The translations under genes and the position numbers were made by a program. Below the pieces are notes generated by a model, which saw only the letters and a program-made list of their open reading frames with translations, did no database searches and was not told where the DNA came from. This document shows, piece by piece, positions 36,707-63,515 of a stretch of DNA of 64,000 bases. The stretch covers positions 16,368,001-16,432,000 of the forward strand of contig OZ281498.1 in NCBI GenBank assembly GCA_965637545.1, in the 5' to 3' direction. The first letter of the stretch is position 1. Each line of letters starts with the position of its first letter. This DNA comes from Phallusia mammillata (Eukaryota).

Positions 36707-36756
36707 AAAAATGAGGAACGCTTCACGATTTTGCGTGTCATCCTTGCGCAGGGGCC

Positions 36757-36796
<40 letters not shown>

Positions 36797-36813
36797 ACTG
36801 CCGAAGCAAGTAC
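36707..36813 (-). ncRNA. U6: U6 spliceosomal snRNA
   Basis: Full-length copy matching 34075-34181. Confidence 0.98.
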
Positions 36814-38022: not shown

Positions 38023-38072
38023 AAAAATGAGGAACGCTTCACGATTTTGCGTGTCATCCTTGCGCAGGGGCC

Positions 38073-38112
<40 letters not shown>

Positions 38113-38129
38113 ACTGCCGAAGCAAGTAC
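38023..38129 (-). ncRNA. U6: U6 spliceosomal snRNA
   Basis: Full-length copy matching 34075-34181. Confidence 0.98.
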
Positions 38130-39328: not shown

Positions 39329-39378
39329 AAAAATGAGGAACGCTTCACGATTTTGCGTGTCATCCTTGCGCAGGGGCC

Positions 39379-39418
<40 letters not shown>

Positions 39419-39435
39419 ACTGCCGAAGCAAGTAC
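39329..39435 (-). ncRNA. U6: U6 spliceosomal snRNA
   Basis: Full-length copy matching 34075-34181. Confidence 0.98.
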
Positions 39436-40644: not shown

Positions 40645-40694
40645 AAAAATGAGGAACGCTTCACGATTTTGCGTGTCATCCTTGCGCAGGGGCC

Positions 40695-40734
<40 letters not shown>

Positions 40735-40751
40735 ACTGCCGAAGCAAGTAC
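40645..40751 (-). ncRNA. U6: U6 spliceosomal snRNA
   Basis: Full-length copy matching 34075-34181. Confidence 0.98.
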
Positions 40752-41960: not shown

Positions 41961-42010
41961 AAAAATGAGGAACGCTTCACGATTTTGCGTGTCATCCTTG
42001 CGCAGGGGCC

Positions 42011-42050
<40 letters not shown>

Positions 42051-42067
42051 ACTGCCGAAGCAAGTAC
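41961..42067 (-). ncRNA. U6: U6 spliceosomal snRNA
   Basis: Full-length copy matching 34075-34181. Confidence 0.98.
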
Positions 42068-43266: not shown

Positions 43267-43316
43267 AAAAATGAGGAACGCTTCACGATTTTGCGTGTCA
43301 TCCTTGCGCAGGGGCC

Positions 43317-43356
<40 letters not shown>

Positions 43357-43373
43357 ACTGCCGAAGCAAGTAC
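43267..43373 (-). ncRNA. U6: U6 spliceosomal snRNA
   Basis: Full-length copy matching 34075-34181. Confidence 0.98.
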
Positions 43374-44582
43374 ATTTAAGTTAACCCCACCAGCAATTTA
43401 GGTCCCACCTCGACGAGGGGTATTTTCCGTTTGTGGGGACCGCCGTGCTGGGCTCCTGGTGTGACGTCACAACGCCAGACAGACGTTATGTGTACGTCGG
43501 GGCAGACGAAGGCCGTCAAACGCATCCATCTTGAGCGGCGTTTCGATTCGAAAGAAAAGGCAAAAAAACGTTGCCCCAGGTCCGTTACTCCTCCAGGGAA
43601 AAGCCGAGAAACCGAGATTTTCTCGCCGTGTGACACCTGTCGGTATGTGCTGTGTCAGTTCAGGACAAGATGCATCCGATAATAATAATCAAACGAAAGC
43701 TTAGCTTCCACTTATTCTCATGAGTCAACGCAATGTGAAAGCGTAGCCGTGCTGAAAAAGCTGAAAAGACCACCAAGCAGTGTCCGAAGGGATCAGTTAA
43801 GCAATTTGAGACCAACTACAGAAAGCGATTTATCAACACAGGCACGAAAGGTAAACCTGATGCAAGAAGTGCAGAGAATAAAGTTGGCGTTAGGTTCCTT
43901 TTATATATTTTTCTCAACTACCGGATTTCCCCGTTTTCAAACTAACAGTATGCAAGGCAATGCGGTTATGTCTGTAGCCTATAGCTCTTTCTCGGCTCTA
44001 AAACAAGCGAAAGACAGCCGGTAGCCGGTTTAGGAAAGGTGTGTGAGTAGTGATGAAATACCACTTTTCTGCCATGTGAGAAATGATAGTAAAGCAGAAA
44101 ACTCACTTAAGATTTTTTTCCTCTTTTTTTCTTGTTGTTATTTTAGGTGCAGCTATAGTTGTTTTAGTACCCTTCCCGTTCTTCTGTGCTAGCTCCTACG
44201 TCGGTGTCTTATTTTTTGCCTTCGTGTTCGGTTTTGATGCGTGGTGCTCTAAGAAAAAGGGAGGTCTGCTTCGCTGTGCGGCGCTGTGCGGCGCTGAACG
44301 AGACGGCCGGTCATTTAAACCGCACCGCGCGCGTTCAGCAGCGCCGCTTAGCGGTATGGGCGACAAAGGCACGCGTACCGCATAAAAACAGTCGCCGGTC
44401 TCTCACGTGTCTTTGATAATAATTAATCGATCCGGCGCACAAAACGAAGACTTCTGCGACAGAGACTCTCATCATGCGCTTATTTCGCCGCCTTTCAGTG
44501 TGTCTGTGAGCTGTCAAGACCCCAGGGGGCAGTATTTCTGCAAGATCTCATTTTTTTTCCGAGAAAGAAGAAATTAATGAGG

Positions 44583-44632
44583 AAAAATGAGGAACGCTTC
44601 ACGATTTTGCGTGTCATCCTTGCGCAGGGGCC

Positions 44633-44672
<40 letters not shown>

Positions 44673-44689
44673 ACTGCCGAAGCAAGTAC
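44583..44689 (-). ncRNA. U6: U6 spliceosomal snRNA
   Basis: Full-length copy matching 34075-34181. Confidence 0.98.
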
Positions 44690-45897
44690 ATTTAAGTTAA
44701 CCCCACCAGCAATTTAGGTCCCACCTCGACGAGGGGTATTTTCCGTTTGTGGGGACCGCCGTGCTGGGCTCCTGGTGTGACGTCACAACGCCAGACAGAC
44801 GTTATGTGTACGTCGGGGCAGACGAAGCCGTCAAACGCATCCATCTTGAGCGGCGTTTCGATTCGAAAGAAAAGGCAAAAAAACGTTGCCCCAGGTCCGT
44901 TACTCCTCCAGGGAAAAGCCGAGAAACCGAGATTTTCTCGCCGTGTGACACCTGTCGGTATGTGCTGTGTCAGTTCAGGACAAGATGCATCCGATAATAA
45001 TAATCAAACGAAAGCTTAGCTTCCACTTATTCTCATGAGTCAACGCAATGTGAAAGCGTAGCCGTGCTGAAAAAGCTGAAAAGACCACCAAGCAGTGTCC
45101 GAAGGGATCAGTTAAGCAATTTGAGACCAACTACAGAAAGCGATTTATCAACACAGGCACGAAAGGTAAACCTGATGCAAGAAGTGCAGAGAATAAAGTT
45201 GGCGTTAGGTTCCTTTTATATATTTTTCTCAACTACCGGATTTCCCCGTTTTCAAACTAACAGTATGCAAGGCAATGCGGTTATGTCTGTAGCCTATAGC
45301 TCTTTCTCGGCTCTAAAACAAGCGAAAGACAGCCGGTAGCCGGTTTAGGAAAGGTGTGTGAGTAGTGATGAAATACCACTTTTCTGCCATGTGAGAAATG
45401 ATAGTAAAGCAGAAAACTCACTTAAGATTTTTTTCCTCTTTTTTTCTTGTTGTTATTTTAGGTGCAGCTATAGTTGTTTTAGTACCCTTCCCGTTCTTCT
45501 GTGCTAGCTCCTACGTCGGTGTCTTATTTTTTGCCTTCGTGTTCGGTTTTGATGCGTGGTGCTCTAAGAAAAAGGGAGGTCTGCTTCGCTGTGCGGCGCT
45601 GTGCGGCGCTGAACGAGACGGCCGGTCATTTAAACCGCACCGCGCGCGTTCAGCAGCGCCGCTTAGCGGTATGGGCGACAAAGGCACGCGTACCGCATAA
45701 AAACAGTCGCCGGTCTCTCACGTGTCTTTGATAATAATTAATCGATCCGGCGCACAAAACGAAGACTTCTGCGACAGAGACTCTCATCATGCGCTTATTT
45801 CGCCGCCTTTCAGTGTGTCTGTGAGCTGTCAAGACCCCAGGGGGCAGTATTTCTGCAAGATCTCATTTTTTTTCCGAGAAAGAAGAAATTAATGAGG

Positions 45898-45947
45898 AAA
45901 AATGAGGAACGCTTCACGATTTTGCGTGTCATCCTTGCGCAGGGGCC

Positions 45948-45987
<40 letters not shown>

Positions 45988-46004
45988 ACTGCCGAAGCAA
46001 GTAC
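45898..46004 (-). ncRNA. U6: U6 spliceosomal snRNA
   Basis: Full-length copy matching 34075-34181. Confidence 0.98.
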
Positions 46005-47213
46005 ATTTAAGTTAACCCCACCAGCAATTTAGGTCCCACCTCGACGAGGGGTATTTTCCGTTTGTGGGGACCGCCGTGCTGGGCTCCTGGTGTGACGTCA
46101 CAACGCCAGACAGACGTTATGTGTACGTCGGGGCAGACGAAGGCCGTCAAACGCATCCATCTTGAGCGGCGTTTCGATTCGAAAGAAAAGGCAAAAAAAC
46201 GTTGCCCCAGGTCCGTTACTCCTCCAGGGAAAAGCCGAGAAACCGATATTTTCTCGCCGTGTGACACCTGTCGGTATGTGCTGTGTCAGTTCAGGACAAG
46301 ATGCATCCGATAATAATAATCAAACGAAAGCTTAGCTTCCACTTATTCTCATGAGTCAACGCAATGTGAAAGCGTAGCCGTGCTGAAAAAGCTGAAAAGA
46401 CCACCAAGCAGTGTCCGAAGGGATCAGTTAAGCAATTTGAGACCAACTACAGAAAGCGATTTATCAACACAGGCACGAAAGGTAAACCTGATGCAAGAAG
46501 TGCAGAGAATAAAGTTGGCGTTAGGTTCCTTTTATATATTTTTCTCAACTACCGGATTTCCCCGTTTTCAAACTAACAGTATGCAAGGCAATGCGGTTAT
46601 GTCTGTAGCCTATAGCTCTTTCTCGGCTCTAAAACAAGCGAAAGACAGCCGGTAGCCGGTTTAGGAAAGGTGTGTGAGTAGTGATGAAATACCACTTTTC
46701 TGCCATGTGAGAAATGATAGTAAAGCAGAAAACTCACTTAAGATTTTTTTCCTCTTTTTTTCTTGTTGTTATTTTAGGTGCAGCTATAGTTGTTTTAGTA
46801 CCCTTCCCGTTCTTCTGTGCTAGCTCCTACGTCGGTGTCTTATTTTTTGCCTTCGTGTTCGGTTTTGATGCGTGGTGCTCTAAGAAAAAGGGAGGTCTGC
46901 TTCGCTGTGCGGCGCTGTGCGGCGCTGAACGAGACGGCCGGTCATTTAAACCGCACCGCGCGCGTTCAGCAGCGCCGCTTAGCGGTATGGGCGACAAAGG
47001 CACGCGTACCGCATAAAAACAGTCGCCGGTCTCTCACGTGTCTTTGATAATAATTAATCGATCCGGCGCACAAAACGAAGACTTCTGCGACAGAGACTCT
47101 CATCATGCGCTTATTTCGCCGCCTTTCAGTGTGTCTGTGAGCTGTCAAGACCCCAGGGGGCAGTATTTCTGCAAGATCTCATTTTTTTTCCGAGAAAGAA
47201 GAAATTAATGAGG

Positions 47214-47263
47214 AAAAATGAGGAACGCTTCACGATTTTGCGTGTCATCCTTGCGCAGGGGCC

Positions 47264-47303
<40 letters not shown>

Positions 47304-47320
47304 ACTGCCGAAGCAAGTAC
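47214..47320 (-). ncRNA. U6: U6 spliceosomal snRNA
   Basis: Full-length copy matching 34075-34181. Confidence 0.98.
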
Positions 47321-48527
47321 ATTTAAGTTAACCCCACCAGCAATTTAGGTCCCACCTCGACGAGGGGTATTTTCCGTTTGTGGGGACCGCCGTGCTGGGC
47401 TCCTGGTGTGACGTCACAACGCCAGACAGACGTTATGTGTACGTCGGGGCAGACGAAGGCCGTCAAACGCATCCATCTTGAGCGGCGTTTCGATTCGAAA
47501 GAAAAGGCAAAAAAACGTTGCCCCAGGTCCGTTACTCCTCCAGGGAAAAGCCGAGAAACCGAGATTTTCTCGCCGTGTGACACCTGTCGGTATGTGCTGT
47601 GTCAGTTCAGGACAAGATGCATCCGATAATAATAATCAAACGAAAGCTTAGCTTCCACTTATTCTCATGAGTCAACGCAATGTGAAAGCGTAGCCGTGCT
47701 GAAAAAGCTGAAAAGACCACCAAGCAGTGTCCGAAGGGATCAGTTAAGCAATTTGAGACCAACTACAGAAAGCGATTTATCAACACAGGCACGAAAGGTA
47801 AACCTGATGCAAGAAGTGCAGAGAATAAAGTTGGCGTTAGGTTCCTTTTATATATTTTTCTCAACTACCGGATTTCCCCGTTTTCAAACTAACAGTATGC
47901 AAGGCAATGCGGTTATGTCTGTAGCCTATAGCTCTTTCTCGGCTCTAAAACAAGCGAAAGACAGCCGGTAGCCGGTTTAGGAAAGGTGTGTGAGTAGTGA
48001 TGAAATACCACTTTTCTGCCATGTGAGAAATGATAGTAAAGCAGAAAACTCACTTAAGATTTTTTTCCTCTTTTTTTCTTGTTGTTATTTTAGGTGCAGC
48101 TATAGTTGTTTTAGTACCCTTCCCGTTCTTCTGTGCTAGCTCCTACGTCGGTGTCTTATTTTTTGCCTTCGTGTTCGGTTTTGATGCGTGGTGCTCTAAG
48201 AAAAAGGGAGGTCTGCTTCGCTGTGCGGCGCTGTGCGGCGCTGAACGAGACGGCCGGTCATTTAAACCGCACCGCGCGCGTTCAGCAGCGCCGCTTAGCG
48301 GTATGGGCGACAAAGGCACGCGTACCGCATAAAAACAGTCGCCGGTCTCTCACGTGTCTTTGATAATAATTAATCGATCCGGCGCACAAAACGAAGACTT
48401 CTGCGACAGAGACTCTCATCATGCGCTTATTCGCCGCCTTTCAGTGTGTCTGTGAGCTGTCAAGACCCCAGGGGGCAGTATTTCTGCAAGATCTCATTTT
48501 TTTCCGAGAAAGAAGAAATTAATGAGG

Positions 48528-48577
48528 AAAAATGAGGAACGCTTCACGATTTTGCGTGTCATCCTTGCGCAGGGGCC

Positions 48578-48617
<40 letters not shown>

Positions 48618-48634
48618 ACTGCCGAAGCAAGTAC
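48528..48634 (-). ncRNA. U6: U6 spliceosomal snRNA
   Basis: Full-length copy matching 34075-34181. Confidence 0.98.
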
Positions 48635-49833
48635 ATTTAAGTTAACCCCACCAGCAATTTAGGTCCCACCTCGACGAGGGGTATTTTCCGTTTGTGGGGA
48701 CCGTCGTGCTGGGCTCCTGGTGTGACGTCACAACGCCAGACAGACGTTATGTGTACGTCGGGGCAGACGAAGGCCGTCAAACGCATCCATCTTGAGCGGC
48801 GTTTCGATTCGAAAGAAAAGGCAAAAAAACGTTGCCCCAGGTCCGTTACTCCTCCAGGGAAAAGCCGAGAAACCGAGATTTTCTCGCCGTGTGACACCTG
48901 TCGGTATGTGCTGTGTCAGTTCAGGACAAGATGCATCCGATAATAATAATCAAACGAAAGCTTAGCTTCCACTTATTCTCATGAGTCAACGCAATGTGAA
49001 AGCGTAGCCGTGCTGAAAAAGCTGAAAAGACCACCAAGCAGTGTCCGAAGGGATCAGTTAAGCAATTTGAGACCAACTACAGAAAGCGATTTATCAACAC
49101 AGGCACGAAAGGTAAACCTGATGCAAGAAGTGCAGAGAATAAAGTTGGCGTTAGGTTCCTTTTATATATTTTTCTCAACTACCGGATTTCCCCGTTTTCA
49201 AACTAACAGTATGCAAGGCAATGCGGTTATGTCTGTAGCCTATAGCTCTTTCTCGGCTCTAAAACAAGCGAAAGACAGCCGGTAGCCGGTTTAGGAAAGG
49301 TGTGTGAGTAGTGATGAAATACCACTTTTCTGCCATGTGAGAAATGATAGTAAAGCAGAAAACTCACTTAAGATTTTTTTCCTCTTTTTTTCTTGTTGTT
49401 ATTTTAGGTGCAGCTATAGTTGTTTTAGTACCCTTCCCGTTCTTCTGTGCTAGCTCCTACGTCGGTGTCTTATTTTTTGCCTTCGTGTTCGGTTTTGATG
49501 CGTGGTGCTCTAAGAAAAAGAGAGGTCTGCTTCGCTGTGCGGCGCTGAACGAGACGGCCGGTCATTTAAACCGCACCGCGCGCGTTCAGCAGCGCCGCTT
49601 AGCGGTATGGGCGACAAAGGCACGCGTACCGCATAAAAACAGTCGCCGGTCTCTCACGTGTCTTTGATAATAATTAATCGATCCGGCGCACAAAACGAAG
49701 ACTTCTGCGACAGAGACTCTCATCATGCGCTTATTTCGCCGCCTTTCAGTGTGTCTGTGAGCTGTCAAGACCCCAGGGGGCAGTATTTCTGCAAGATCTC
49801 ATTTTTTTTCCGAGAAAGAAGAAATTAATGAGG

Positions 49834-49883
49834 AAAAATGAGGAACGCTTCACGATTTTGCGTGTCATCCTTGCGCAGGGGCC

Positions 49884-49923
<40 letters not shown>

Positions 49924-49940
49924 ACTGCCGAAGCAAGTAC
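49834..49940 (-). ncRNA. U6: U6 spliceosomal snRNA
   Basis: Full-length copy matching 34075-34181. Confidence 0.98.
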
Positions 49941-51148
49941 ATTTAAGTTAACCCCACCAGCAATTTAGGTCCCACCTCGACGAGGGGTATTTTCCGTTTG
50001 TGGGGACCGCCGTGCTGGGCTCCTGGTGTGACGTCACAACGCCAGACAGACGTTATGTGTACGTCGGGGCAGACGAAGGCCGTCAAACGCATCCATCTTG
50101 AGCGGCGTTTCGATTCGAAAGAAAAGGCAAAAAAACGTTGCCCCAGGTCCGTTACTCCTCCAGGGAAAAGCCGAGAAACCGAGATTTTCTCGCCGTGTGA
50201 CACCTGTCGGTATGTGCTGTGTCAGTTCAGGACAAGATGCATCCGATAATAATAATCAAACGAAAGCTTAGCTTCCACTTATTCTCATGAGTCAACGCAA
50301 TGTGAAAGCGTAGCCGTGCTGAAAAAGCTGAAAAGACCACCAAGCAGTGTCCGAAGGGATCAGTTAAGCAATTTGAGACCAACTACAGAAAGCGATTTAT
50401 CAACACAGGCACGAAAGGTAAACCTGATGCAAGAAGTGCAGAGAATAAAGTTGGCGTTAGGTTCCTTTTATATATTTTTCTCAACTACCGGATTTCCCCG
50501 TTTTCAAACTAACAGTATGCAAGGCAATGCGGTTATGTCTGTAGCCTATAGCTCTTTCTCGGCTCTAAAACAAGCGAAAGACAGCCGGTAGCCGGTTTAG
50601 GAAAGGTGTGTGAGTAGTGATGAAATACCACTTTTCTGCCATGTGAGAAATGATAGTAAAGCAGAAAACTCACTTAAGATTTTTTTCCTCTTTTTTTCTT
50701 GTTGTTATTTTAGGTGCAGCTATAGTTGTTTTAGTACCCTTCCCGTTCTTCTGTGCTAGCTCCTACGTCGGTGTCTTATTTTTTGCCTTCGTGTTCGGTT
50801 TTGATGCGTGGTGCTCTAAGAAAAAGGGAGGTCTGCTTCGCTGTGCGGCGCTGTGCGGCGCTGAACGAGACGGCCGGTCATTTAAACCGCACCGCGCGCG
50901 TTCAGCAGCGCCGCTTAGCGGTATGGGCGACAAAGGCACGCGTACCGCATAAAAACAGTCGCCGGTCTCTCACGTGTCTTTGATAATAATTAATCGATCC
51001 GGCGCACAAAACGAAGACTTCTGCGACAGAGACTCTCATCATGCGCTTATTTCGCCGCCTTTCAGTGTGTCTGTGAGCTGTCAAGACCCCAGGGGGCAGT
51101 ATTTCTGCAAGATCTCATTTTTTTCCGAGAAAGAAGAAATTAATGAGG

Positions 51149-51198
51149 AAAAATGAGGAACGCTTCACGATTTTGCGTGTCATCCTTGCGCAGGGGCC

Positions 51199-51238
<40 letters not shown>

Positions 51239-51255
51239 ACTGCCGAAGCAAGTAC
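51149..51255 (-). ncRNA. U6: U6 spliceosomal snRNA
   Basis: Full-length copy matching 34075-34181. Confidence 0.98.
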
Positions 51256-52454
51256 ATTTAAGTTAACCCCACCAGCAATTTAGGTCCCACCTCGACGAGG
51301 GGTATTTTCCGTTTGTGGGGACCGTCGTGCTGGGCTCCTGGTGTGACGTCACAACGCCAGACAGACGTTATGTGTACGTCGGGGCAGACGAAGGCCGTCA
51401 AACGCATCCATCTTGAGCGGCGTTTCGATTCGAAAGAAAAGGCAAAAAAACGTTGCCCCAGGTCCGTTACTCCTCCAGGGAAAAGCCGAGAAACCGAGAT
51501 TTTCTCGCCGTGTGACACCTGTCGGTATGTGCTGTGTCAGTTCAGGACAAGATGCATCCGATAATAATAATCAAACGAAAGCTTAGCTTCCACTTATTCT
51601 CATGAGTCAACGCAATGTGAAAGCGTAGCCGTGCTGAAAAAGCTGAAAAGACCACCAAGCAGTGTCCGAAGGGATCAGTTAAGCAATTTGAGACCAACTA
51701 CAGAAAGCGATTTATCAACACAGGCACGAAAGGTAAACCTGATGCAAGAAGTGCAGAGAATAAAGTTGGCGTTAGGTTCCTTTTATATATTTTTCTCAAC
51801 TACCGGATTTCCCCGTTTTCAAACTAACAGTATGCAAGGCAATGCGGTTATGTCTGTAGCCTATAGCTCTTTCTCGGCTCTAAAACAAGCGAAAGACAGC
51901 CGGTAGCCGGTTTAGGAAAGGTGTGTGAGTAGTGATGAAATACCACTTTTCTGCCATGTGAGAAATGATAGTAAAGCAGAAAACTCACTTAAGATTTTTT
52001 TCCTCTTTTTTTCTTGTTGTTATTTTAGGTGCAGCTATAGTTGTTTTAGTACCCTTCCCGTTCTTCTGTGCTAGCTCCTACGTCGGTGTCTTATTTTTTG
52101 CCTTCGTGTTCGGTTTTGATGCGTGGTGCTCTAAGAAAAAGAGAGGTCTGCTTCGCTGTGCGGCGCTGAACGAGACGGCCGGTCATTTAAACCGCACCGC
52201 GCGCGTTCAGCAGCGCCGCTTAGCGGTATGGGCGACAAAGGCACGCGTACCGCATAAAAACAGTCGCCGGTCTCTCACGTGTCTTTGATAATAATTAATC
52301 GATCCGGCGCACAAAACGAAGACTTCTGCGACAGAGACTCTCATCATGCGCTTATTTCGCCGCCTTTCAGTGTGTCTGTGAGCTGTCAAGACCCCAGGGG
52401 GCAGTATTTCTGCAAGATCTCATTTTTTTTCCGAGAAAGAAGAAATTAATGAGG

Positions 52455-52504
52455 AAAAATGAGGAACGCTTCACGATTTTGCGTGTCATCCTTGCGCAGG
52501 GGCC

Positions 52505-52544
<40 letters not shown>

Positions 52545-52561
52545 ACTGCCGAAGCAAGTAC
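52455..52561 (-). ncRNA. U6: U6 spliceosomal snRNA
   Basis: Full-length copy matching 34075-34181. Confidence 0.98.
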
Positions 52562-54440: not shown

Positions 54441-54982
54441 ATAAACTTGGTGTTATCCTTTGTTTTGTTAAGTTATCTTATCCTTGTTAAAAATGTAGGT
54501 TTCTAAAATAGACAGGAAAAGTAGTTTTGGTATATGCTTAAGTTTTTATGACAGAAAAATAAGTTTTGGTATGTGCTCAAGAATTTTTTTCTGTTTGCCT
54601 TAGTTTTTAAGTTGTTGCAGACTGAGCTGTGAGTTTTGCTTGTCGCAAGTTATGTTCTTAACACAAAAACAAGTTTTACATCTCTCACTAAATAAGACCA
54701 AGTTTAAATTTACAAAAAATACACACAGCTCATATACTAAAGTACAATATGATATCTTCTAAACATAAAGCTATGGCATATTTTTTAAATTTTATTAAAA
54801 AAAGAATGTAAAAAAATTAAAAAACGATTACAATTATTTGTTTTGGCAACATTTGTTCATGAAAAATTTCACCCGATTAAGTTCTAGCGGCAAATATACA
54901 ACAAGAAAACGAGGAAGATTTGATACAAAATAAATCACAGTTGTTACACATATTTCTTGAAGAGTTTGCAAACGTAAACAGA

Positions 54983-57900
54983 TCAAAGGCACTGATCAAA
55001 TGGAGATCCACCTATGTCGTGAGGTATACAATTTTCACGAAAGCCTTCCAGAAATTCAGTAAACTCTACGACATGCTGGTCAAGCAAGGACGTACTTTCA
55101 GCACCTTCCAGAAAAAAATGCAAACGGGAGTGGGCACTTGAAGCTTTAGAGCATTTTGATATGCAACTTTCGATTTCATCGGCCAGCGCTTGAGAACATT
55201 CCGAAGGCTTGTAGTCAACCGTTGCAAGCTTTAGTTTATCAGAATTGAATTCTTCGTCGTCTTTGCCGATCACCAATGCATACATAATCAACCCCAGAGC
55301 ATCAGCACCGCAATACGATTCTCGCTGTGATTCAGCGTCTAAATCGCCATTAATAATGTTACGGAACTTGAAGCCGCCCACTTTGCAGCGCGCGTTCCGC
55401 GTCACGAATACGTCATCGACAGTGATGTCACCAATGACAAGTTGCGGAGCGGATTGAAGAAAAACGAAGGCGGATGCAACGTCGACGCAAAACCGTGTGC
55501 GCAGTAATACCGGAAAGTAGGGCGCCTCTGCCGGAAGTTGTGAGGCGACATTGAAATAATCAATATCGTCAATATATTCCATAACTGCTCCCAGTGAACC
55601 AGGCCATGAGGTGTATCCAAACACTTTCACCACGCTGTCGTGAGTTTTCAGGTAGAACTTCTCCATTCCTTTCATGATTCTATGACAAAAACATATTCAT
55701 AAAGTTAAAAAAACGTGTTTAAGCATTTTTTAATTTTTTTGTGCTGGTGCACAATGACCAGTTTCATTCATTTGGAATGATGCAAAAAATTCGTTTTTTC
55801 GCTTTCAACGTTTCTCGTAAAAGAATATTTTAAGTATAACGACTTAAAGCATTGTTGTTCTTGGTGATTTTTGATCTGTTTGTAGCCGTATTGATAAAAT
55901 GAAACAATTCTTACAAGACTTACTGTTTCATTAGTTCGTCGCCAATCTTGTGGATTCCTTGAGTTTGGTAATATTTCACCGCCACATAACCATGCAGATT
56001 ATTCCAAGCTTTCTTCACAAATGAGAAAAAGCCAGTTTCCAATCGATTACGACTGGTTGGTAATTCATTTGGTGGAAAATATGGAAGTGTCGTCTGCAGA
56101 ACAGGGACAGTTTTAAAGCTTGTTAAGATAGAAAGATGTTACTAGGATCCTTTGAATAAAACACTGACCGCGTTTTTAAGCGAAACATACGCATATATGA
56201 ATGACCGTATTTTTTCTAAAATTTATGACATAGACATTTTTATAATATGTGGAAAATGTTTAAGGCATTAAAATTACAGGAACCCTTTCAAAACAAAGTA
56301 AATTTTATAAAGTGAACAGAGACGGTTCTTAAAAACTAGAAAAGAAAGCAATTTACCTTGATGCCACTGCTTTCAAGCTTGTCATGTTCTGACAATTTCA
56401 TCTTCATGGATTTTAGGTTCTACAACAAAAACAAATCGTTAAAAATGTAAAGTGTTAATGTCACTATTAGGTTTAAGTTAGAGTAGTCTAATGACTGTCA
56501 AAAAGTATGGTTGTATTCTTGGTCAACTCATCAAAGGAGGCAACTCTCTACAGTGGGGAAAAACTTTTCTTATAAGGAAATGAAGACAAAAACGGCCATG
56601 ACGATATTGCTTTAATTTTGTTGGTTCTTGGTAGGGTGACACCATGCCAAGTGCGGTATCTGTACTCGTCCGATATTTAGCTGTGTCGGATTAAACGCCT
56701 ATATCCTTTGCCACAATAAAGTCATTTGACACAAACTTTCTCGTCTGGTTAGGACGTTTAATGCTCCATCTTCTTTGAGAACACATATAAGTCGTGTCGA
56801 AAGAACGATTTGGTGAATCAGCAATTTTAACTACGATTCAGTCTATTTAAGTAATTTGTTTTGGAGGAGTAAAAACGTACGGTTTAAAAAAACGTTAAAT
56901 CGACTCACTTGTCAAATATGGCGTTGTTAAGTTATTGCGCCTCAACTGAGCTAGACTACCATGGATCAAGTTTGGGCCGTTACAGTGTTTTACAAACGCA
57001 CACTAAACACCGCTTTTTATTGGGCAATGCAAACCTACATAACAACAGCAGCTAAAAGTTGCTACAAGCAACACAAGGGCTTTTCGTATGCGTGAATTTT
57101 CTAGAAATAATTTAGTCTGCACAGCAAGCAAACAAATTGACGTGTTACCTGCTGAAGTTGGAAGATCTCTTTGTACTTTTTCCAGTAAAAGGAAAAATTC
57201 TCATTCTCCATGTTGCAATTCAATTCCGTGCTCTCAGAGGCTTCTTCGAGAGATGATCGGTTTCGTTGCTCACAATCCCCCACACTAACAGCTTCCTTTA
57301 TCTAAAACAGTAAATTCGGTGGTCGCCAAATGTTTAAAGAGAGATTTAGTTTGCCACAAACATACACTTAGTTTTACATGAAGCTCTTAATAAAAAGGTC
57401 ACATCGTCAAAGTTAAAATAGGTAAATATTAGGGATGGGCCGAGCCGAGCCAGAACCCGAGTACTCGGTACCGAGCATTGCGGTTTTTAATGCTCGGTGT
57501 TCGGCCGAGCAATTACACAAACTGACCCGAGCGTTAAATTTGCATACTCATGCCCTGTCAACATATGTAACTATTGTTGTAAAGGGTGTCTATTAGGGAT
57601 GTGCCAAAACTGCAAATGTTCTGTTTGGTCGAGCACCGAGCATTAAAGTGAGATGCTCGGTGCTCGACCAAACAGAACATTTGCAGTTTTGGCACATCCC
57701 TAGTAAATATTGTCAAAGAGTATGTATTGGCGGCCATTAATACAAAAAAAAAATCTCCCAGACCACGAAAGTGTAAAGGTAGAGACATGTCTAGGCTTAT
57801 TTTGCGACAATATTTCTAACTGAATAATGGATTGGAAACGCAAATTCGACAGAAGCAGTTAAAACACTTTTTGAATACACATTGTTGCGTTTGTGAATTT

Positions 57901-58783
57901 ACAGAATAATCGAAAAACAATACTCCCCGTATTTGAATTACCTAATTCTCTTTCTTGGAAACAATTTCTATTTAGTAATTCGTTTATTTTGTTTGAAATA
58001 AGCAATCATACAAGAACCTAGAATTTAATAAAAAAAGACAGCCCTAACAGCAAAACGAAAAATTATAAAAAAAACATGCCGGAAAACTAAAAAAAGGTTG
58101 TACCCCAGAATCCATTGCCTCCTTATAAACTTCCAGGACTTGGTTTTCACGTTCTTGTCTACCTTCATTTTTCTGCATCTAAAAAATCACAAAATGTTGT
58201 AGGTGCGAATAATAGTAAAGAGTGCAATGGTGTGATGTACATTTCACATACATTTCGATGATGTAAAAATATATATAAAGTGCAAAGCTTGTGTTAGCTA
58301 TAACTAGATTTAAAACAAAACATACTTCATAAACAGACAGAAAAAAATCTCGTTCCAAAGCAACTTTTTCACTAAATGCTTCCTCCATCGATAATCGTAA
58401 ATATGCTTTGGACCAAAATGAAGAATTTTTAAGTGATTTTTTAGCCTGCTCCACACATTTCTTGTGCTGTTCCTCAAATGGTCGATTGTTGGTTTTTAGA
58501 GCTTCCTGAAATGTGTTTAACAAAAACGTTTCTTAACTTGTATTATCTTATTGATTTTCACAATTTAAATATCTGTTAGAAATACTGTTTTTTTCCCAAT
58601 AATAAGACATAAATAGTATGTCATGAATATTTATTTGGTTATAAAATCTGTTACTTGCATAAACATCAATTTGTTAGATACTTATTTGGTAGAAGACATG
58701 CTTGTAGAGTCTAAACAGGAACAAACCTTCATCTTGCAAAAATAGTCTTCTGCCGCTGCAATGAGAATGCCAAGCATTTTTTT
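54983..58783 (-). CDS. Helical-bundle plus RIPK/MLKL-type pseudokinase. In-frame exons approx. 58783-58727, 58508-58329, 58189-58115, 57291-57139, 56420-56358, 56093-55924, 55680-54983
   Basis: Spliced: KKMLGILIAAAEDYFCKMKEALKTNNRPFEEQHKKCVEQAKKSLK (atlastin/GBP 3HB-like), then LETGFFSFVKKAWNNLHGYVAVK (subdomains I-II), AVMEY, VIGDITVDDVFV (HRD lost) and CKVGGFKFR (DFG replaced by GFK). Exon phases are compatible. Confidence 0.78.
57430..57702. mobile_element. hAT-type MITE containing a 109-bp perfect fold-back
   Basis: Ends TAGGGATG / CATCCCTA; exact TSD GTAAATAT at 57422-57429 and 57703-57710; 50-bp arms with a 9-nt loop at 57594-57702. Confidence 0.88.
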
Positions 58784-58974
58784 CTGCAACAAAACAGTAG
58801 TTTCATTACCATCGAAAAATGTTTGTGACTAAATTTTTTGCTTCTTGGGAATTGAGTCTCAACATCAAGTATGTATTTTCAAAGCATTAAAAGTGATATT
58901 GGGGAAAAAAATCAACAAAAAATTAGAAAGGTGGCTTTCTGATATACTTCCATTTTATATATTCTATACGACAT

Positions 58975-60684
58975 TTACCAATTTACTATACACATCATTT
59001 GATCTACATATATGATTGTTTTTGCAAGCAAAAACAGATGGGTCCCCACATGCGCGTTTTACGGATTTAACGTCCTGGTTATTTTTAGATTCTTAAGAAA
59101 AAACTTAACCAACTTTAGCAATAACTCAGCTTTAAAAGTTTTGTCCGTATTCTTTTTGCATCATTATTGTCATATAATTACAAAAAAACAGTACATAAGA
59201 ACGGGAAAAATACTTTTAATTTAATCTCATGCTTTGACCTTGATATTGTCGTTCAAGGTCAGTTTTTAACACAATTTTCCACAACTGAAAATGTGCTTGA
59301 TACTTAATAAAACGACATAGCATAGCTGCGCAAAAACAGCTGATTTCTAATCACTGAAACGACTGTCTCGTAAAACGTCTGTCCGGACGTCAAGCTGAGC
59401 AATCCCGCTGCATTCACCCGCCTTAATCGTAAACAAGTGAATTACTCCCTTGAGAGTTGAGACTTCTATCTGACTGACAGTGTACACATATTATAGGCTG
59501 TAAAAGTAACTATTTGGCCGATTAAGACAAAATTTTAAGTACTGAACAAATAACCTACTGCAAACAATTGTTTAACATTTTAGCACATTATGGCTTGTAT
59601 TTTTGGCCTAAAACTTATTATTTGGGGGTTTAAGGGGAAAAATGGGTGAATCCAATAAAAAGTTACAAATTTTTTTAGAATACCTTACATTGCACCAACC
59701 AACAAACCATGAAACTCTCAGATTATGTACTTTAGTCAGTACAGCCGTTTTTAATTTTTTTTTGGGGGGGGGGGGGGGGGGGCTGTGGGTGAACCACTAG
59801 GTCGTTTGGGGTCAAACTTCAGGAGGATCAAATTTGGAACATTAACTAACATCTGTGCAAATTTCAATAAATTTAAAGCACTCTTTCTTGACCAAACGCA
59901 TTTAACAAACCAGCGTTAGACAGAAATGAATATTTGGGGGTTTAAGGGGTGAAAATGGGTGAATCGAAAAAAAGATACAAAATTCTTTGAAATTTCTTAT
60001 ATTGCACCAAACAACAAAGCATATCACACAGAGATGCTGTACTTTATCAACAAAATTTTCAGCTCTTCCGGCAGTTTTTTATTCTACTGTGCCAACGTTT
60101 CGATGTCCCATACGAAACACCTTCATCAGGGTAATGACATACATTGCAAACACAAGTTATTATAAAGCGAAAAGGGCGGCGAAACACACACAAAAAAGGC
60201 GGTAGAAAAAACGCAATGCGCACCAATGGTCGTGTGATAACACCTGGCTTTTTTGTGTGTGTTTCGCCGCCCTTTTCGCTTTATAATAACTTGTGTTTGC
60301 AATGTATGTCATTACCCTGATGAAGGTGTTTCGTATGGGACATCGAAACGTTGGCACAGTAGAATAAAAAACTGCCGGAAGAGCTGAAAATTTTGTTGAT
60401 ACGTTATGCCTGGCAGCAACAGTGTATTCATGCTGTACTTTAGTCAGTACAGCCGTTTTTAAAAAAATACGTTTTGGGGGCCTGTGGGTGAACCACTGGG
60501 TCAATCGGGGTCAAACTTCAGGAGGATCAAATTTGGATTATTAACTAACATCTCTGTAAATTTGAATAAATTTGGAGCACTCTTTCTTGACCATACACGT
60601 CTCACAAGCCAGCGTTAGACAGAAAAAAGAAAAAAAAAATACGGACAAAAACAATATGTGTCCCCTTCAGGGAAGGGGACCCAT
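58975..60684 (-). mobile_element. Second copy of the 2115-3430 dispersed element, interrupted by a Penelope-like insert
   Basis: Reverse-complement similarity to 2115-3430, including the GGGGACCCAT end. Confidence 0.75.
60047..60429. mobile_element. Penelope-like inverted pLTR remnant with hammerhead-ribozyme motifs
   Basis: 153-bp inverted arms (60046-60198 / 60248-60400). Each arm has CCCTGATGAAG-[GTGTTTC GTAT GGGACAT]-CGAAACGTTGG. Flanked by a 13-bp direct repeat ATGCTGTACTTTA. Confidence 0.7.
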
Positions 60685-60722
60685 AATTACATCACAAGAT
60701 GCAACTCATCAAACACTGTTTT

Positions 60723-61279
60723 CATGGGCGTCCGCAGGCAAAAATACAGGGGAGGGCAAACTATCGTCACATCGCTGTTCGATAAACGGTATTTCCGAAC
60801 AAAAATCATCTGACAGTGATACTCTTTCTTGCCAATTCCAATGTAGCAAAGTAGTGCAATAAACACAATATCAACTATTACGGTAATATGTGGAAGGTTG
60901 GCAAACGATTTTTAACGGAAGTAGGATTTACATACACGAACCTTATCAGATGTAACAACAGATACAGTGAAGGTATCACATAATGGCTTTTTGACACATC
61001 CATCAATGACGTAATAATATGCTTGTTACCGAGCTATTGTTAAGTAATAATGTTCGATTCATTTAATCTGTTGTAAAAACTCATCCTGTTCTGTTACAGT
61101 TACAGCTTGTATTCAGTGCGTTTAACGGGGTGGAGACCCACGATGTCTTCAGTTTACGTTCCAGGAATAGTTTTTGTATAACACTGTGTGAATGTTTATG
61201 GTGTTTTGTTTTAAGATGCGAATTTTGCGACAGTTTGCGTTTTCTTTTTTCCAGGGGGGGGCACATGCGGACGCCCATG
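60723..61279. mobile_element. hAT-type MITE
   Basis: TIRs CATGGGCGTCCGCA / TGCGGACGCCCATG; exact TSD ACTGTTTT at 60715-60722 and 61280-61287. Confidence 0.88.
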
Positions 61280-61395
61280 ACTGTTTTGCCATAACTAGCA
61301 AGTTTCAAATCAAATATGTTTCAATGAAGCAATGATTTGAAAAAGGGCAGTACACAAAGTTTTGGAATAAGAAATGAAGTTTTCTTTGCTCTTAC

Positions 61396-63515
61396 TTTGT
61401 CCAAGGCTTCTTCTTTGATTATAAGCAACAATTTGTTGTTTTCGGCTTCAATTGCCACTTCTAAGCTTTTCTGAGCAGGTTGGAAGCCTTCCCATAACAG
61501 CTCTTCACTAGTGCAACTTTCTTTAAACTGTTTCAGCACATCAGCTGAAATTTCAGCATGGCCCTCCTTACGTGCTCTTTCACTCCTTCCTGCTTCACAG
61601 AATTTCTGAATGTCAAAATTTTAGGATTAGTTTTTGTTTAAAAATGTTTTTATTCAAAAAGTTGATAATAGAAGTTTAATAAACAACCTGCTGTTATTGG
61701 TACACAGGCTTGAAATTAGTAAGATCTGGTGCCTTGATATGTTGGATTGTACAACAACAATAGATGTCAGTAAAGTTGCAAACTTTTTTCTTTTAATATT
61801 GCTTCTGTATTTTTAGGCTGCTAAGTATGGAACATACATTTAAATTGTTATGATGTCATAAGTGTTGAAAAGTTGAGAAGTACTGACTATACAGTAGTAT
61901 CTTGCGCATGCAAAAAACACTTCACAATATTAAACACATGTAAAATGTTTTACATTACCCTAAAGAGTTTTGCATATTCAGTGGAAAAATGTTCCACCTT
62001 CTTCTCGAAATGTCCTTCCAAAAATTGCTGCACAAATACACAGAGCACACAAAATTGCATTAACACCAATCATATTAAAAACAAATGTTAATGCTTTCAC
62101 ACAGAGATCACATGTTCAGCATTTGATTTACCTCGTTTTTGTTGTTTCTTTCAATCATATGGCCTTTTAAAAAATTGAAACTGTCCAGCATTTTTTCATC
62201 AAAAGCATCCATCTTGTTGACATCTTCACCACAAACAGTTCCAGCATGCAACCTGAAAAACTTGACACCTTCCCTTTTTGCTGCCTTGTCCTTTTCTGCA
62301 AAGGTCTTTTTAGAAATCCAGACTTCTGTAGCTTTCTGCAAAGAGATTTTTTGTTCAGAAACTGAAATTTACTGCTCCGGTTGATCACTTATGCTATTGC
62401 TATGCCAAGTAAAACCTTGTTTGCTCTAGAAACATCTTAAACAGAGTAGAGGTGCATAAGTATAAATAAGGGGATAACCAGTTACTTGTTTATCATCATT
62501 TCAATTTAACACACTGGTTGACTCTAGTTTTTATGTTTTTTTGTCTTAAGTTTAAAGCAAAATTTTAATGCAATTTGATTGCTTTGAAATGTTATTTATT
62601 TTTGACATTCAACGTTTTTTTTTTTGCCAATTTCAAACATTGCTACCTATAACTGCTTAAATTGTAATATTGGTTTAATCATTTGGTTAATTTAATAAAT
62701 ATATATTTTTATATGTATGCCAAAAGGAATAAAACCATTTATGTGCCTATTTAGAATGAATAAAGGAGGTGTGTAAAGAAGTAAAACTGACCGACAACTA
62801 GTGATGGGACGGGTACCCGGTACTCGGTACTCGGTATCGATGGTATCGAACGATTTCAGTGGTATCGATACTCGTACTCGGTATCGAAATATTTTGCCTC
62901 AGTTTTCGATACCAACGTGCGAATACCGAAGGCCGATTTACACCATAAGAATACGGGCAACTTTATGCCAATATTTGCTTCGGACAGCACAAAATTGGAA
63001 AAAAGTTCCGCCAGTTTACGTATATCTTTTTCGCTATCATGTGGAGATTACATTTTTTGGCATGTGTGTGTGCACGCCTGTACCCCGACCATGGCAGATA
63101 AATTAGCCAGTGATATACAACTAAGCACAACACTACACCTAAGTACTCGGTAATCGTACTCGGTACTCGGTATCGAAGGTATATACATGTGGTACTCGTA
63201 CTCGGTATCGGTACTCGCTTCAAAACCTGGTATCGTCCCATCACTACCGACAACAGCTATTCTGTAAATGAGTCCACAAACTGACATAAGTGCAAACTGA
63301 AATTTATTTTTGCTTTAGATTGATTGATTATATCAGAAGTGCTTATAGTTCATTTGTGTTAAAAATCCCCCAAAAAATATTTTAATTTCTGTCAGCAACT
63401 TTATGACCATGCAACAAAATAGGAAAAACAAAAAACATATTTTTACCTGCATTGCTCTTTCATATACTTTAGCAGATGCCATGCTTATTTTGTAAAGTTC
63501 ATCTATGATGTTGGT
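61396..63515 (-). pseudogene. Upstream atlastin/GBP-like helical-repeat exons of the pseudokinase gene, apparently with coding lesions; gene probably continues beyond the window
   Basis: Exons TNIIDELYKISMASAKVYERAMQ (63515-63447) and ..AKREGVKFFRLHAGTVCGEDV..HMIERNNKNE (ends about 62131) align by eye with atlastin ATAKDTYNKKME / EESVKLFRGVKKMGGEEF..IKHNDSKN. There is an in-frame TAA near 62370 and a frame break near 61770 under my exon picks. Confidence 0.5.
62799..63246. mobile_element. hAT-type MITE with GGTACTC/GGTATCG subterminal repeats
   Basis: TIRs TAGTGATGGGAC / GTCCCATCACTA; exact TSD CCGACAAC at 62791-62798 and 63247-63254. Confidence 0.9.

What the first reader, a model, noticed from the sequence alone, without database searches (positions are those of the whole stretch)
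54983..58783. MLKL-like pseudokinase fused to atlastin/GBP-type helical repeats
Seen: VAVK lysine retained, HRD replaced by IGD, DFG replaced by GFK (CKVGGFKFR). Established: human MLKL has VKLAGFELR and HGK at these positions and sits behind a helical-bundle killer domain. Seen: the N-terminal exons resemble repeated atlastin/GBP three-helix bundles rather than a clear MLKL 4HB. Inference: a membrane-acting or large-GTPase-derived effector controlled by a pseudokinase switch.
Basis: partly seen in the sequence, partly recalled or inferred. Interest (0 to 1): 0.72.

Follow-up and report, generated by a model that had tools for sequence, protein, structure and literature searches.

The report
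Dead kinase on atlastin-type stalk
This is the 3' two-thirds of an expressed sea-squirt (Phallusia mammillata) gene whose protein is a long helical stalk built from atlastin-type three-helix bundles and ends in a catalytically dead RIPK-like kinase domain; it is a dead-kinase member of an undescribed ascidian GTPase-kinase fusion family, not a relative of the cell-death protein MLKL.

Summary
On the minus strand, VAVK (55974-55985), IGD in place of the catalytic-loop motif (55412-55435) and GFK in place of DFG (55361-55387) are all present, in a real but very divergent kinase domain.

The gene is larger than the finding. Eleven GT-AG exons (63515 down to 54986) encode residues 486-1133 of the database protein CAB3265594.1, and the first 485 residues lie beyond the window. 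Spliced contigs from four studies carry all seven joints tested in single contigs, so helical and kinase exons share one transcript.

Relatives in Phallusia and Clavelina show the origin:
- an atlastin-like GTPase (E 2e-57 to atlastin-1);
- a long helical stalk;
- a C-terminal kinase closest to RIPK1/RIPK2.

The window gene sits in a monophyletic dead-kinase clade that also lost the whole activation segment. Two stalk segments fold like the atlastin three-helix bundle (Z 10.5-12.8); no MLKL four-helix bundle was found. Urochordates have true MLKL genes elsewhere.

MLKL kinship and a phospho-switch killer are not supported. Whether this gene still encodes a GTPase domain is open.

This scan already found intact members of the fusion family on other DNA of this genome (s1-411727).

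The parts
63447..63515 (-). Exon U1 (69 nt, phase 0), protein residues 486-508. Short exon of helical unit 1, with Y-x3-M two residues before its end.
   Evidence: AG/GT boundaries; tblastn to P0001.
62132..62335 (-). Exon U2 (204 nt), residues 509-576. Long exon of helical unit 1.
61959..62027 (-). Exon U3 (69 nt), residues 577-599. Short exon of helical unit 2, with Y-x3-F two residues before its end.
61396..61605 (-). Exon U4 (210 nt), residues 600-669. Long exon of helical unit 2.
   Evidence: Joint 58783|61396 is seen in contigs of three runs.
58727..58783 (-). Exon Ea (57 nt), residues 670-688. It is the short exon of helical unit 3, with Y-x3-M two residues before its end.
58326..58505 (-). 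Exon Eb (180 nt), residues 689-748. With Ea it forms the atlastin-type three-helix bundle (protein residues about 655-755).
   Evidence: AF2 model pLDDT 83.6. ATL1/ATL3 three-helix bundle Z 10.5-11.2, rmsd 2.0-3.4. RNF112 Z 10.6 and ATL1 Z 9.4.
58104..58178 (-). Exon Ec (75 nt), residues 749-773. Short exon of helical unit 4, with Y-x3-M four residues before its end.
57149..57301 (-). Exon Ed (153 nt), residues 774-824. With Ec it forms a second bundle, which aligns together with unit 3 to the GBP1 middle domain.
   Evidence: GBP1 residues 315-479, Z 9.2, 151 aligned. GBP5 Z 8.8, 171 aligned.
56357..56419 (-). Exon Ee (63 nt), residues 825-845. End of a long helix that leads into the kinase domain.
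55924..56093 (-). Exon Ef (170 nt; ends in phase 2), residues 846-902. Kinase N-lobe, with the degenerate glycine loop ETGFFSFV (56016-56039) and the retained beta-3 lysine in VAVK (55974-55985).
   Evidence: Joint 55679|55924 is seen in four runs.
54986..55679 (-). Last coding exon Eg, residues 902-1133 (stop codon at 54983-54985). It holds the alpha-C helix with Gly in the Glu column (55658-55672), IGDITVDD in place of HGDLKPxN (55412-55435) and GGFKF in place of GDFGG (55364-55378). The activation segment and APE motif are deleted, the C-lobe is shortened, and a family-conserved C-terminal tail lies at 54986-55081.
54825..54982 (-). 3' UTR, at least 158 nt.
   Evidence: Inferred from the extent of the 4320-nt contig of run X1 beyond 55500 (record positions 1-675). 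Contigs cannot show a true RNA end.

Best explanation
Shown:
- The locus is the 3' two-thirds of an expressed, correctly spliced Phallusia mammillata gene (protein CAB3265594.1, 1133 aa).
- Its family is specific to ascidians. Ancestrally it combined an atlastin-like GTPase, a long soluble stalk and a C-terminal non-RD ('HGD') kinase closest to RIPK1/RIPK2.
- In this protein the stalk holds at least two atlastin-type three-helix bundles.
- In a monophyletic sub-clade that includes this gene, two Phallusia paralogues and fragments from two unidentified sources, the kinase has become a pseudokinase.
- That pseudokinase keeps the beta-3 lysine. It has lost the glycine loop, the alpha-C glutamate, the catalytic-loop His/Lys/Asn, the DFG aspartate and the entire activation segment.
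- The annotated protein also lacks GTPase motifs G1-G4. It has no membrane-spanning segment, no CaaX box and no death-fold domain.

Inferred:
- The protein does not phosphorylate anything and does not fuse or perforate membranes by itself.
- It most likely works as a non-catalytic partner. Its stalk and dead kinase domain would pair with active family members, or with their substrates or upstream sensors.
- In that way it would scaffold, cap or dampen signalling that the active members start when GTP-driven dimerisation of their atlastin-type domains brings two kinase domains together.
- Known parallels are dead paralogues that regulate live kinases, such as KSR with RAF or HER3 with EGFR.
- An immune role is only suggested, by the RIPK-like kinase, the GBP-like build, the lineage-specific expansion and the fast divergence.
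For: Gene model and expression:
- Eleven AG/GT exons match P0001 residues 486-1133.
- Seven exon joints with CT..AC ends occur in single contigs of 2.5-4.3 kb from runs of separate studies, with intron depth zero outside repeats.

Family:
- P0001 residues 42-1005 are collinear with P0013 residues 255-1150 (E 5e-18).
- The P0013 N-terminus matches atlastin-1 at 2e-57, against 5e-9 for GBP5.
- The P0013 kinase matches RIPK1 at 5e-22 and RIPK2 at 3.5e-20, ahead of BRI1 and RIPK3.
- Pfam finds GBP plus Pkinase in P0013, P0011 and P0005.

Dead kinase:
- Motif table and alignments.
- The clade has SH-aLRT support of 99 inside the tunicate HGD kinases.
- The xFK[F/Y]xN motif and about 20 other columns are invariant across its five members, which argues for retained constraint.

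Stalk:
- AF2 model of residues 632-848, pLDDT 83.6.
- ATL1/ATL3 three-helix bundle Z 10.5-11.2, with the next unrelated natural chains near Z 7 (a designed three-helix protein scored 8.4).
- RNF112, ATL1, GBP1, Sey1p and Drosophila atlastin take 5 of the top 10 places in the wide search.
- A second bundle at residues 299-393 scores Z 12.8 with rmsd 2.0.

Solubility: the highest 19-residue hydropathy is 1.5, inside the kinase core.
Against: - No experiment or interaction data exist. The partner-pairing mechanism is inference by analogy.
- The catalytic aspartate (IGD) and the beta-3 lysine survive in this copy, so some residual or atypical nucleotide use cannot be excluded.
- The N-terminus is unresolved. 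A 4320-nt contig of run X1 runs about 760 nt beyond the annotated start codon. That is about the size of the roughly 225-residue GTPase core that paralogues carry in front of the aligned position. The real protein may therefore still have a GTPase-like domain.
- The full-length AF2 model is poor (pLDDT 47). The Z scores lie under the value of about 13 at which helical bundles become unambiguous.
- No named RIPK, MLKL or IRAK reference sequences could be put in a tree.
Confidence: 0.6

Rival explanations
1. MLKL-like executioner. The helical region is a membrane-acting effector held in check by the pseudokinase and released by a conformational or phosphorylation switch.
For: - The overall layout resembles MLKL: a helical N-terminal part, a long helix leading into the kinase, and a C-terminal pseudokinase with the lysine kept and D-to-G at DFG (MLKL motifs in PMC6013482).
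- Active relatives carry HG at the catalytic loop, as MLKL's HGK does.
- Atlastin and GBP relatives do act on membranes (established knowledge).
Against: - No four-helix bundle was found. Fold searches return atlastin, RNF112 and GBP stalks and no MLKL.
- The activation segment that holds MLKL's switch residues is deleted.
- The family's kinases score best against RIPK1/2, and MLKL is absent from the top 60 in both searches.
- True MLKL orthologues exist in Urochordata (PMC11476962).
- There is no hydrophobic or lipidation signal.
Confidence: 0.1
2. GTPase-bearing regulator. The real transcript encodes a further GTPase-like domain of about 225-250 residues upstream of the annotated start. The protein would then be a nucleotide-controlled dimerising scaffold with a dead kinase, like paralogue P0005.
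For: - The contig of run X1 extends about 760 nt 5' of the annotated ATG.
- P0005 keeps an intact P-loop, DxxG and RD motifs together with a dead kinase.
- P0001 starts abruptly inside the last part of the G domain.
Against: - The deposited coding sequence starts at residue 1 with no GTPase core.
- Its closest paralogue, P0002, has the region but with all G motifs destroyed.
- The extra 760 nt could be UTR, a retained intron or an assembly chimera. The sequence could not be read with these tools.
Confidence: 0.25
3. Decaying relic. An expressed but functionless remnant of an atlastin-kinase fusion gene, on its way to becoming a pseudogene.
For: - Both enzymatic modules are lost in the annotated protein.
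- Branches are very long (1.3-1.8 changes per site).
- Pfam no longer reports a kinase in the full-length protein at E 0.01 or better.
Against: - The 648 codons in the window are open across 11 exons with canonical splice sites.
- Spliced RNA is present in four studies.
- The dead-kinase state is shared by five sequences from at least three sources, with invariant replacement motifs. It is therefore old and maintained.
Confidence: 0.07

Closest known systems
Ascidian atlastin-like GTPase / RIPK-like kinase fusion proteins (Clavelina lepadiformis CAK8691419.1 = P0013 and CAK8691420.1 = P0011; Phallusia CAB3224298.1 = P0005; scan note s1-411727). Present in databases as unnamed or automatically named proteins; no paper found.
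   Same: - Collinear homology over almost the whole length.
- The same helical stalk modules, the same pre-kinase helix and the same conserved C-terminal tail.
- The kinase domain belongs to the same tunicate HGD radiation.
   Different: - This gene's kinase is dead and lacks the activation segment.
- The annotated protein lacks the GTPase core.
- It carries an extra stretch of about 180 residues (exons U1-U4) that its paralogues lack.
MLKL (mixed lineage kinase domain-like pseudokinase)
   Same: - C-terminal TKL-type pseudokinase behind a helical N-terminal region.
- Beta-3 lysine kept and the DFG aspartate replaced by Gly (GFE in MLKL, GFK here) (PMC6013482).
   Different: - No four-helix bundle, no activation loop and no RIPK3-type phosphosites.
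- About 840 helical residues in front of the kinase instead of about 180.
- No specific sequence affinity to MLKL.
- Urochordates have separate true MLKL genes (PMC11476962).
Atlastin-1/-3, RNF112 and GBP1/GBP5 stalk (three-helix-bundle middle domain)
   Same: - Two segments of the stalk superpose on the bundle that follows the GTPase domain in these proteins: Z 10.5-12.8, rmsd 1.7-3.4 over 84-98 residues.
- GBP1/GBP5 align over 151-171 residues.
   Different: - No sequence-level match to those bundles.
- No transmembrane hairpin (atlastin), RING (RNF112) or CaaX box (GBP1).
- The bundles lie far from where the GTPase domain would be.
RIPK1 / RIPK2 kinase domains
   Same: They are the best solved matches of the active family members (81 and 75 bits, against 65 for the next family). 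NCBI's automatic name for this protein is 'RIPK1-like'.
   Different: - No RHIM, death domain or CARD.
- The catalytic loop of the family reads HGD rather than the RIPK form.
- This copy matches RIPK1 only at E 0.13 by itself.
ROCO proteins / LRRK2 (GTPase fused to a TKL kinase)
   Same: The logic of a dimerising G domain in one chain with a RIPK-related kinase (established knowledge). The Dictyostelium Roco4 kinase is among the solved hits of P0013 at 5e-15.
   Different: - The G domain is of a different class: Roc/COR there, atlastin/GBP dynamin-like here.
- The stalk is different.
- No homology outside the kinase domain.

Membership tests
Protein kinase superfamily (as a pseudokinase) | Kinase fold recognisable by sequence | tested here: met
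   Pfam PK_Tyr_Ser-Thr E 3e-5, 23.9 bits against a cut-off of 23.1, on the last exon. Hits to active kinases at 1e-8 to 1e-9 in the 1.84-billion-protein search. The clade profile hits 750 solved kinase chains.
Protein kinase superfamily (as a pseudokinase) | Catalytic residues: glycine loop, VAIK Lys, alpha-C Glu, HRD Asp, catalytic-loop Asn, DFG Asp, APE | tested here: not met
   Only the Lys and, in this copy, the catalytic-loop Asp remain. The rest are replaced or deleted. The domain is therefore a pseudokinase.
MLKL | N-terminal four-helix-bundle executioner domain plus brace | tested here: not met
   Fold searches of residues 632-848 and of the whole model return atlastin, RNF112 and GBP bundles. 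No MLKL chain appears in any list. Residues 1-215 and 420-630 were modelled too poorly to test.
MLKL | Pseudokinase with an activation loop carrying the RIPK3 target residues | tested here: not met
   About 27-31 residues between the DFG position and helix F are deleted relative to active relatives.
MLKL | Kinase domain groups with MLKL in a phylogeny | tested here: inconclusive
   No named MLKL sequence could be obtained through the tools, so no such tree was built. As proxies, MLKL is absent from the top 60 solved hits for P0013 and for the clade profile, and the clade nests in tunicate HGD kinases.
Atlastin/GBP dynamin-like GTPases | GTPase domain with G1 P-loop, G3 DxxG and G4 RD | tested here: not met
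   The annotated protein P0001 begins after G4, aligned to P0013 at about residue 215. The genomic region lies outside the window, and a longer 5' transcript exists, so absence from the true protein is not proven.
Atlastin/GBP dynamin-like GTPases | Three-helix-bundle middle domain | tested here: met
   Residues about 655-755: Z 10.5-11.2 to ATL1/ATL3 residues 335-442. Residues 299-393: Z 12.8 to ATL1 residues 345-434 and Z 12.4 to RNF112.
Atlastin/GBP dynamin-like GTPases | Membrane anchor (atlastin hairpin or GBP CaaX box) | tested here: not met
   The highest 19-residue Kyte-Doolittle mean is 1.5, inside kinase helix E. The C-terminus reads ...FDQCL, which is not a CaaX box.
Ascidian atlastin-stalk / RIPK-like kinase fusion family | Collinear homology of stalk and kinase with members that carry an intact atlastin-type GTPase | tested here: met
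   blastp of P0001 residues 42-1005 against P0013 residues 255-1150, E 5e-18. Matches to P0002 at E 1.5e-53 and P0005 at E 5e-32. Full-length alignment A3.
RIPK family | Kinase domain closest to RIPK1-4 | tested here: inconclusive
   Met for the active relative P0013: RIPK1 5e-22, RIPK2 3.5e-20. The window's own domain is too degenerate: RIPK1 scores E 0.13, behind AMPK and a LysM receptor kinase.
RIPK family | RHIM, death domain, CARD or ankyrin partner domains | tested here: not met
   No Pfam domain other than a sub-threshold DUF3829 hit.

The most novel reading that the evidence does not exclude
Ascidians may have built a lineage-specific innate-immune signalling system from atlastin-type GTPases that dimerise on GTP and are wired directly to RIPK-like kinases. 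In this reading the dead-kinase clade found here supplies its regulated non-catalytic arm. That arm would be either decoys that intercept pathogen effectors aimed at the live kinases, or effectors whose multi-bundle stalk is released to act on membranes. The second case would be a functional analogue of RIPK3-MLKL that arose independently from different parts.
Probability: 0.15. Interest if true: 0.8.

Novelty: new variant of a known kind. Interest (0 to 1): 0.5.

Why it matters
Fusions of a dimerising G domain with a RIPK-related kinase are known only from ROCO/LRRK proteins. Large immune GTPases (GBPs) and RIP kinases are normally separate arms of cell-autonomous immunity.

An ascidian family that joins an atlastin-derived GTPase stalk to a RIPK-like kinase would be a natural experiment. 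It shows how proximity-driven kinase signalling can be assembled from different parts. It also shows how pseudokinases arise inside such a system, because the family has spun off an old, expressed, dead-kinase clade.

This locus adds two things to the scan's earlier notes on intact copies. It gives RNA evidence that stalk and kinase exons are joined in one transcript. It also shows that a pseudokinase branch exists.

It corrects a tempting mis-annotation as well. The gene is neither MLKL nor RIPK1, the name it carries in NCBI.

Tried and rejected
- Exon-by-exon Pfam and PDB sequence searches of the helical exons gave nothing usable.
- A word-index protein search with the last exon gave no hit.
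- A word-index search with the kinase of P0008 returned only bacterial and plant kinases, and no named RIPK, MLKL or IRAK references.
- A word-index search with the family alignment A3 added no members.
- Exact look-ups of P0001 and of the last-exon ORF in public assemblies found nothing, so the DNA beyond position 64000 could not be read.
- The contig L001, which holds a dead-kinase homologue, shows only its kinase exons by tblastn.
- A profile of the pre-kinase module against PDB sequences gave only a designed helical repeat.
- Foldseek on the module gave no E below 0.001.
- Internal repeats were tested three ways and none was significant: blastp self-comparison gave none, hhalign between stalk thirds gave probabilities of 1.6-10%, and Needleman-Wunsch against shuffles for the four exon-pair units gave a maximum z of 1.47.
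- A DSTYK (RIPK5) connection was considered because of similar length and layout. No sequence was available to test it. The literature co-mentions DSTYK and atlastin only as spastic-paraplegia genes.
- Literature searches for an atlastin/GBP-kinase fusion in tunicates found nothing.
- No tandem repeat with a period up to 500 was found; the 1.3-kb U6 array lies beyond that tool's period limit.
Full report
**What is there**

The window is AT-rich animal DNA with no N runs. On the minus strand, between 63515 and 54983, lie eleven open segments. Each is bounded by a canonical AG acceptor and GT donor. All junctions are in phase 0 except the last, which is phase 2.

The last exon (55679-54986, stop at 54983-54985) and the one before it (56093-55924) encode a kinase-like domain. 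Pfam PK_Tyr_Ser-Thr scores E 3e-5, just above the gathering cut-off, on the last exon alone.

- VAVK at 55974-55985;
- IGD within IGDITVDD at 55412-55435;
- CKVGGFKFR at 55361-55387.

Exons were searched one by one by reference. All whole-protein work used P0001, a database protein returned by the representative search.

**Identity of the gene**

A search of 1.84 billion representative proteins with the last exon returned P0001 (1133 aa, E 5e-151), whose residues 903-1133 are that exon. P0001 is CAB3265594.1 of the ascidian Phallusia mammillata, automatically named 'RIPK1-like'.

tblastn places P0001 residues 486-1133 on the eleven window exons, with two or three allelic substitutions. The first 485 residues are encoded beyond position 64000.

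**One transcript**

Contigs of four runs from four separate studies were laid on 55500-61499. They carry exactly the predicted joints:
- 55679|55924
- 56093|56357
- 56419|57149
- 57301|58104
- 58178|58326
- 58504|58726
- 58783|61396

All have CT..AC ends on the plus strand, which is GT..AG on the minus strand. Depth in introns is zero outside repeats. Single contigs of 4320, 2508 and 2489 nt run through all of them.

So the helical and kinase exons are one mRNA.

The 4320-nt contig extends about 2660 nt beyond 61499. That is about 760 nt more than is needed to reach P0001's start codon. This is roughly the size of the GTPase core that paralogues carry upstream. I could not read that sequence.

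**The family**

The next-best hits are two Phallusia paralogues:
- P0002, 1067 aa;
- P0005, 1148 aa, named 'atlastin-2-like'.

Clavelina lepadiformis proteins follow: P0013 (1331 aa), P0011, P0009 and P0021.

Pfam finds a GBP-type GTPase domain plus a protein kinase domain in P0013 (9e-52 and 3e-37), in P0011, and weakly in P0005.

Against solved structures:
- The P0013 N-terminus matches atlastin-1 at 2e-57, far better than GBP5 at 5e-9.
- Its kinase matches RIPK1 (5e-22) and RIPK2 (3.5e-20), ahead of BRI1 and RIPK3.

P0001 is collinear with P0013 (residues 42-1005 against 255-1150, E 5e-18). Relative to P0002 and P0005 it starts about 225 residues late.

In the full-length alignment:
- P0013 and P0005 keep the P-loop, DxxG and RD motifs.
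- P0002 has lost them all.
- P0001 begins after G4.

The nearest kinases anywhere in the protein universe are all tunicate proteins. Some carry other N-terminal domains, such as SPRY.

**The pseudokinase**

Active members read VAIK, a Glu in helix C, HGDLKPxN, DFG and APE.

Five sequences differ from this: P0001, P0002, P0005 and the fragments P0003 and P0004, which come from unidentified public assemblies. In these:
- the lysine is kept;
- Gly stands in the helix-C Glu column;
- IGD, ISG, VSQ, LPK or FSK replaces HGD;
- GFK, GFK, TFK, DFK or IFK replaces DFG;
- the stretch from just after DFG to helix F, including APE, is missing.

They form a clade with SH-aLRT support of 99 inside the tunicate HGD kinases (a quick search with long branches).

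About twenty columns, including the replacement F-K-[FY]-x-N, are invariant among the five. This points to an old and maintained state rather than recent decay.

A profile of the clade hits solved kinases only generically (SIK3, CSF1R, RIPK2, RIPK1). MLKL is not among the best 60.

**The stalk**

AlphaFold2 on full-length P0001 with seven sequences is poor (pLDDT 47). It predicts helix throughout residues 1-841, with moderate confidence at 220-410 and 660-830.

Residues 632-848, modelled alone, reach pLDDT 83.6. Results for this model:
- Foldseek finds nothing significant. Its only low-rmsd row is atlastin-3.
- VIA-align against 48,161 chains ranks RNF112 (Z 10.6), atlastin-1 residues 344-434 (9.4), GBP1 residues 315-479 (9.2 over 151 residues), Sey1p (7.9) and Drosophila atlastin (7.8) in the top ten.
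- The second look gives ATL1/ATL3 Z 10.5-11.2 at rmsd 2.0-3.4, then GBP5 8.8, then, after a designed three-helix protein at 8.4, unrelated natural chains near 7.

The matched part, protein residues about 655-755, is essentially exons Ea plus Eb.

In the full model a second segment, residues 299-393, matches the same bundle. Scores are ATL1 Z 12.8 at rmsd 2.0 and RNF112 Z 12.4 at rmsd 1.7.

These Z values lie under the level at which helical bundles are unambiguous. However, the hits are the right domain of the very superfamily that the paralogues' GTPase domains belong to.

No MLKL four-helix bundle appears in any list. The protein has no hydrophobic segment and no CaaX box.

**Are the bundles repeats?**

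Sequence statistics say no:
- no self-hits by blastp;
- hhalign probabilities of 1.6-10%;
- alignment z of at most 1.5 for the four exon-pair units.

Exon architecture says perhaps. The stalk exons come as short-plus-long pairs of 69+204, 69+210, 57+180 and 75+153 nt, all in phase 0. Each pair is the size of one bundle. Every short exon ends with Y-x3-[M/F] two residues, or in one case four residues, before its 3' end.

Earlier notes of this scan describe atlastin bundles multiplied as two-exon modules elsewhere in this genome (s1-411747 and s1-399127). I used them as a lead only.

**Comparison with MLKL**

Human MLKL has VAIK230, HGK331 and GFE351, with the RIPK3 target sites on its activation loop (PMC6013482). 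The layout and the D-to-G change at DFG are therefore similar.

This protein, however, has no activation loop, no four-helix bundle and no specific sequence affinity to MLKL.

Bona fide MLKL orthologues, whose N-terminal domains kill cells, are reported from Ciona and Styela (PMC11476962). The likeness is best read as convergence.

**Mechanism**

Shown: an expressed, soluble protein made of atlastin-type bundles and a dead RIPK-like kinase domain. It descends from GTPase-kinase fusions.

Inferred: active members are probably switched on when GTP-dependent dimerisation of the atlastin-type domain brings two kinases together. That is the established behaviour of atlastin and GBP G domains, and proximity activation is established for RIP kinases.

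The dead member most likely pairs with them, or with their partners, through stalk and pseudokinase. It would then act as scaffold, cap or decoy.

An immune role is plausible but untested.

**Literature and prior notes**

Three searches found no description of an atlastin/GBP-kinase fusion in tunicates.

The scan itself has already reported intact atlastin/RIPK-like kinase fusion genes on another piece of this genome. That note says RNA evidence for the joined form was lacking (s1-411727).

The present locus supplies RNA evidence for a member and adds the pseudokinase branch.

Noticed in passing
window 32812-52561, minus strand: A tandem array of U6 spliceosomal snRNA genes. There are 15 full copies (116.7 bits each) and one 5' half-copy at 32812-32875, with a period of about 1306-1316 bp. 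The block has 47% G+C, which stands out from the 35-38% flanks. It ends about 2.4 kb from the stop codon of the gene studied here.
   Followed up: partly
window 57300-57700 and 58900-60700 (introns of the gene): Intronic repeats have very high summed contig depth in all four RNA-type runs, up to about 2300. They show many loose ends and internal joints. The group includes a near-perfect palindrome around 57600-57700 and two inverted copies around 59900-60500. These are probably MITE-like transposons expressed from many genomic copies.
   Followed up: no
window 16158-17015 (+) and 31575-32087 (-): Two open stretches in inverted orientation share long, nearly identical peptide segments of an NLR/LRR-type gene. 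One example is the stretch from ASFTDGKTDFLKNK to SPDICKAFRHGLSSEIKL. This looks like a duplicated receptor gene, with one copy abutting the U6 array. Earlier scan notes s1-382229 and s1-382335 cover these.
   Followed up: no
window 29791-30300 (-): A 170-codon open stretch looks like a reverse-transcriptase fragment of a retrotransposon. It lies between LRR-type exons. It was not searched.
   Followed up: no
beyond window position 64000 (contig of run X1): The spliced 4320-nt contig continues about 760 nt upstream of the start codon annotated for CAB3265594.1. The deposited protein may be N-terminally short, or the 5' leader may be unusually long.
   Followed up: partly
proteins P0059, P0060 and P0031 (Clavelina lepadiformis): The same tunicate HGD kinase domain is also found behind SPRY domains. 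P0010 carries three kinase domains with SH2 and SH3. The kinase module seems to have been shuffled onto several kinds of N-terminal domains in tunicates.
   Followed up: partly
window 55950 region and 55180 region: There are two amino-acid differences between the window and the deposited protein: Gly/Asp in exon Ef and Ala/Thr in the last exon. Three of the four RNA-type runs carry one other letter in exon Ef, probably the Gly/Asp site. This fits allelic polymorphism.
   Followed up: partly
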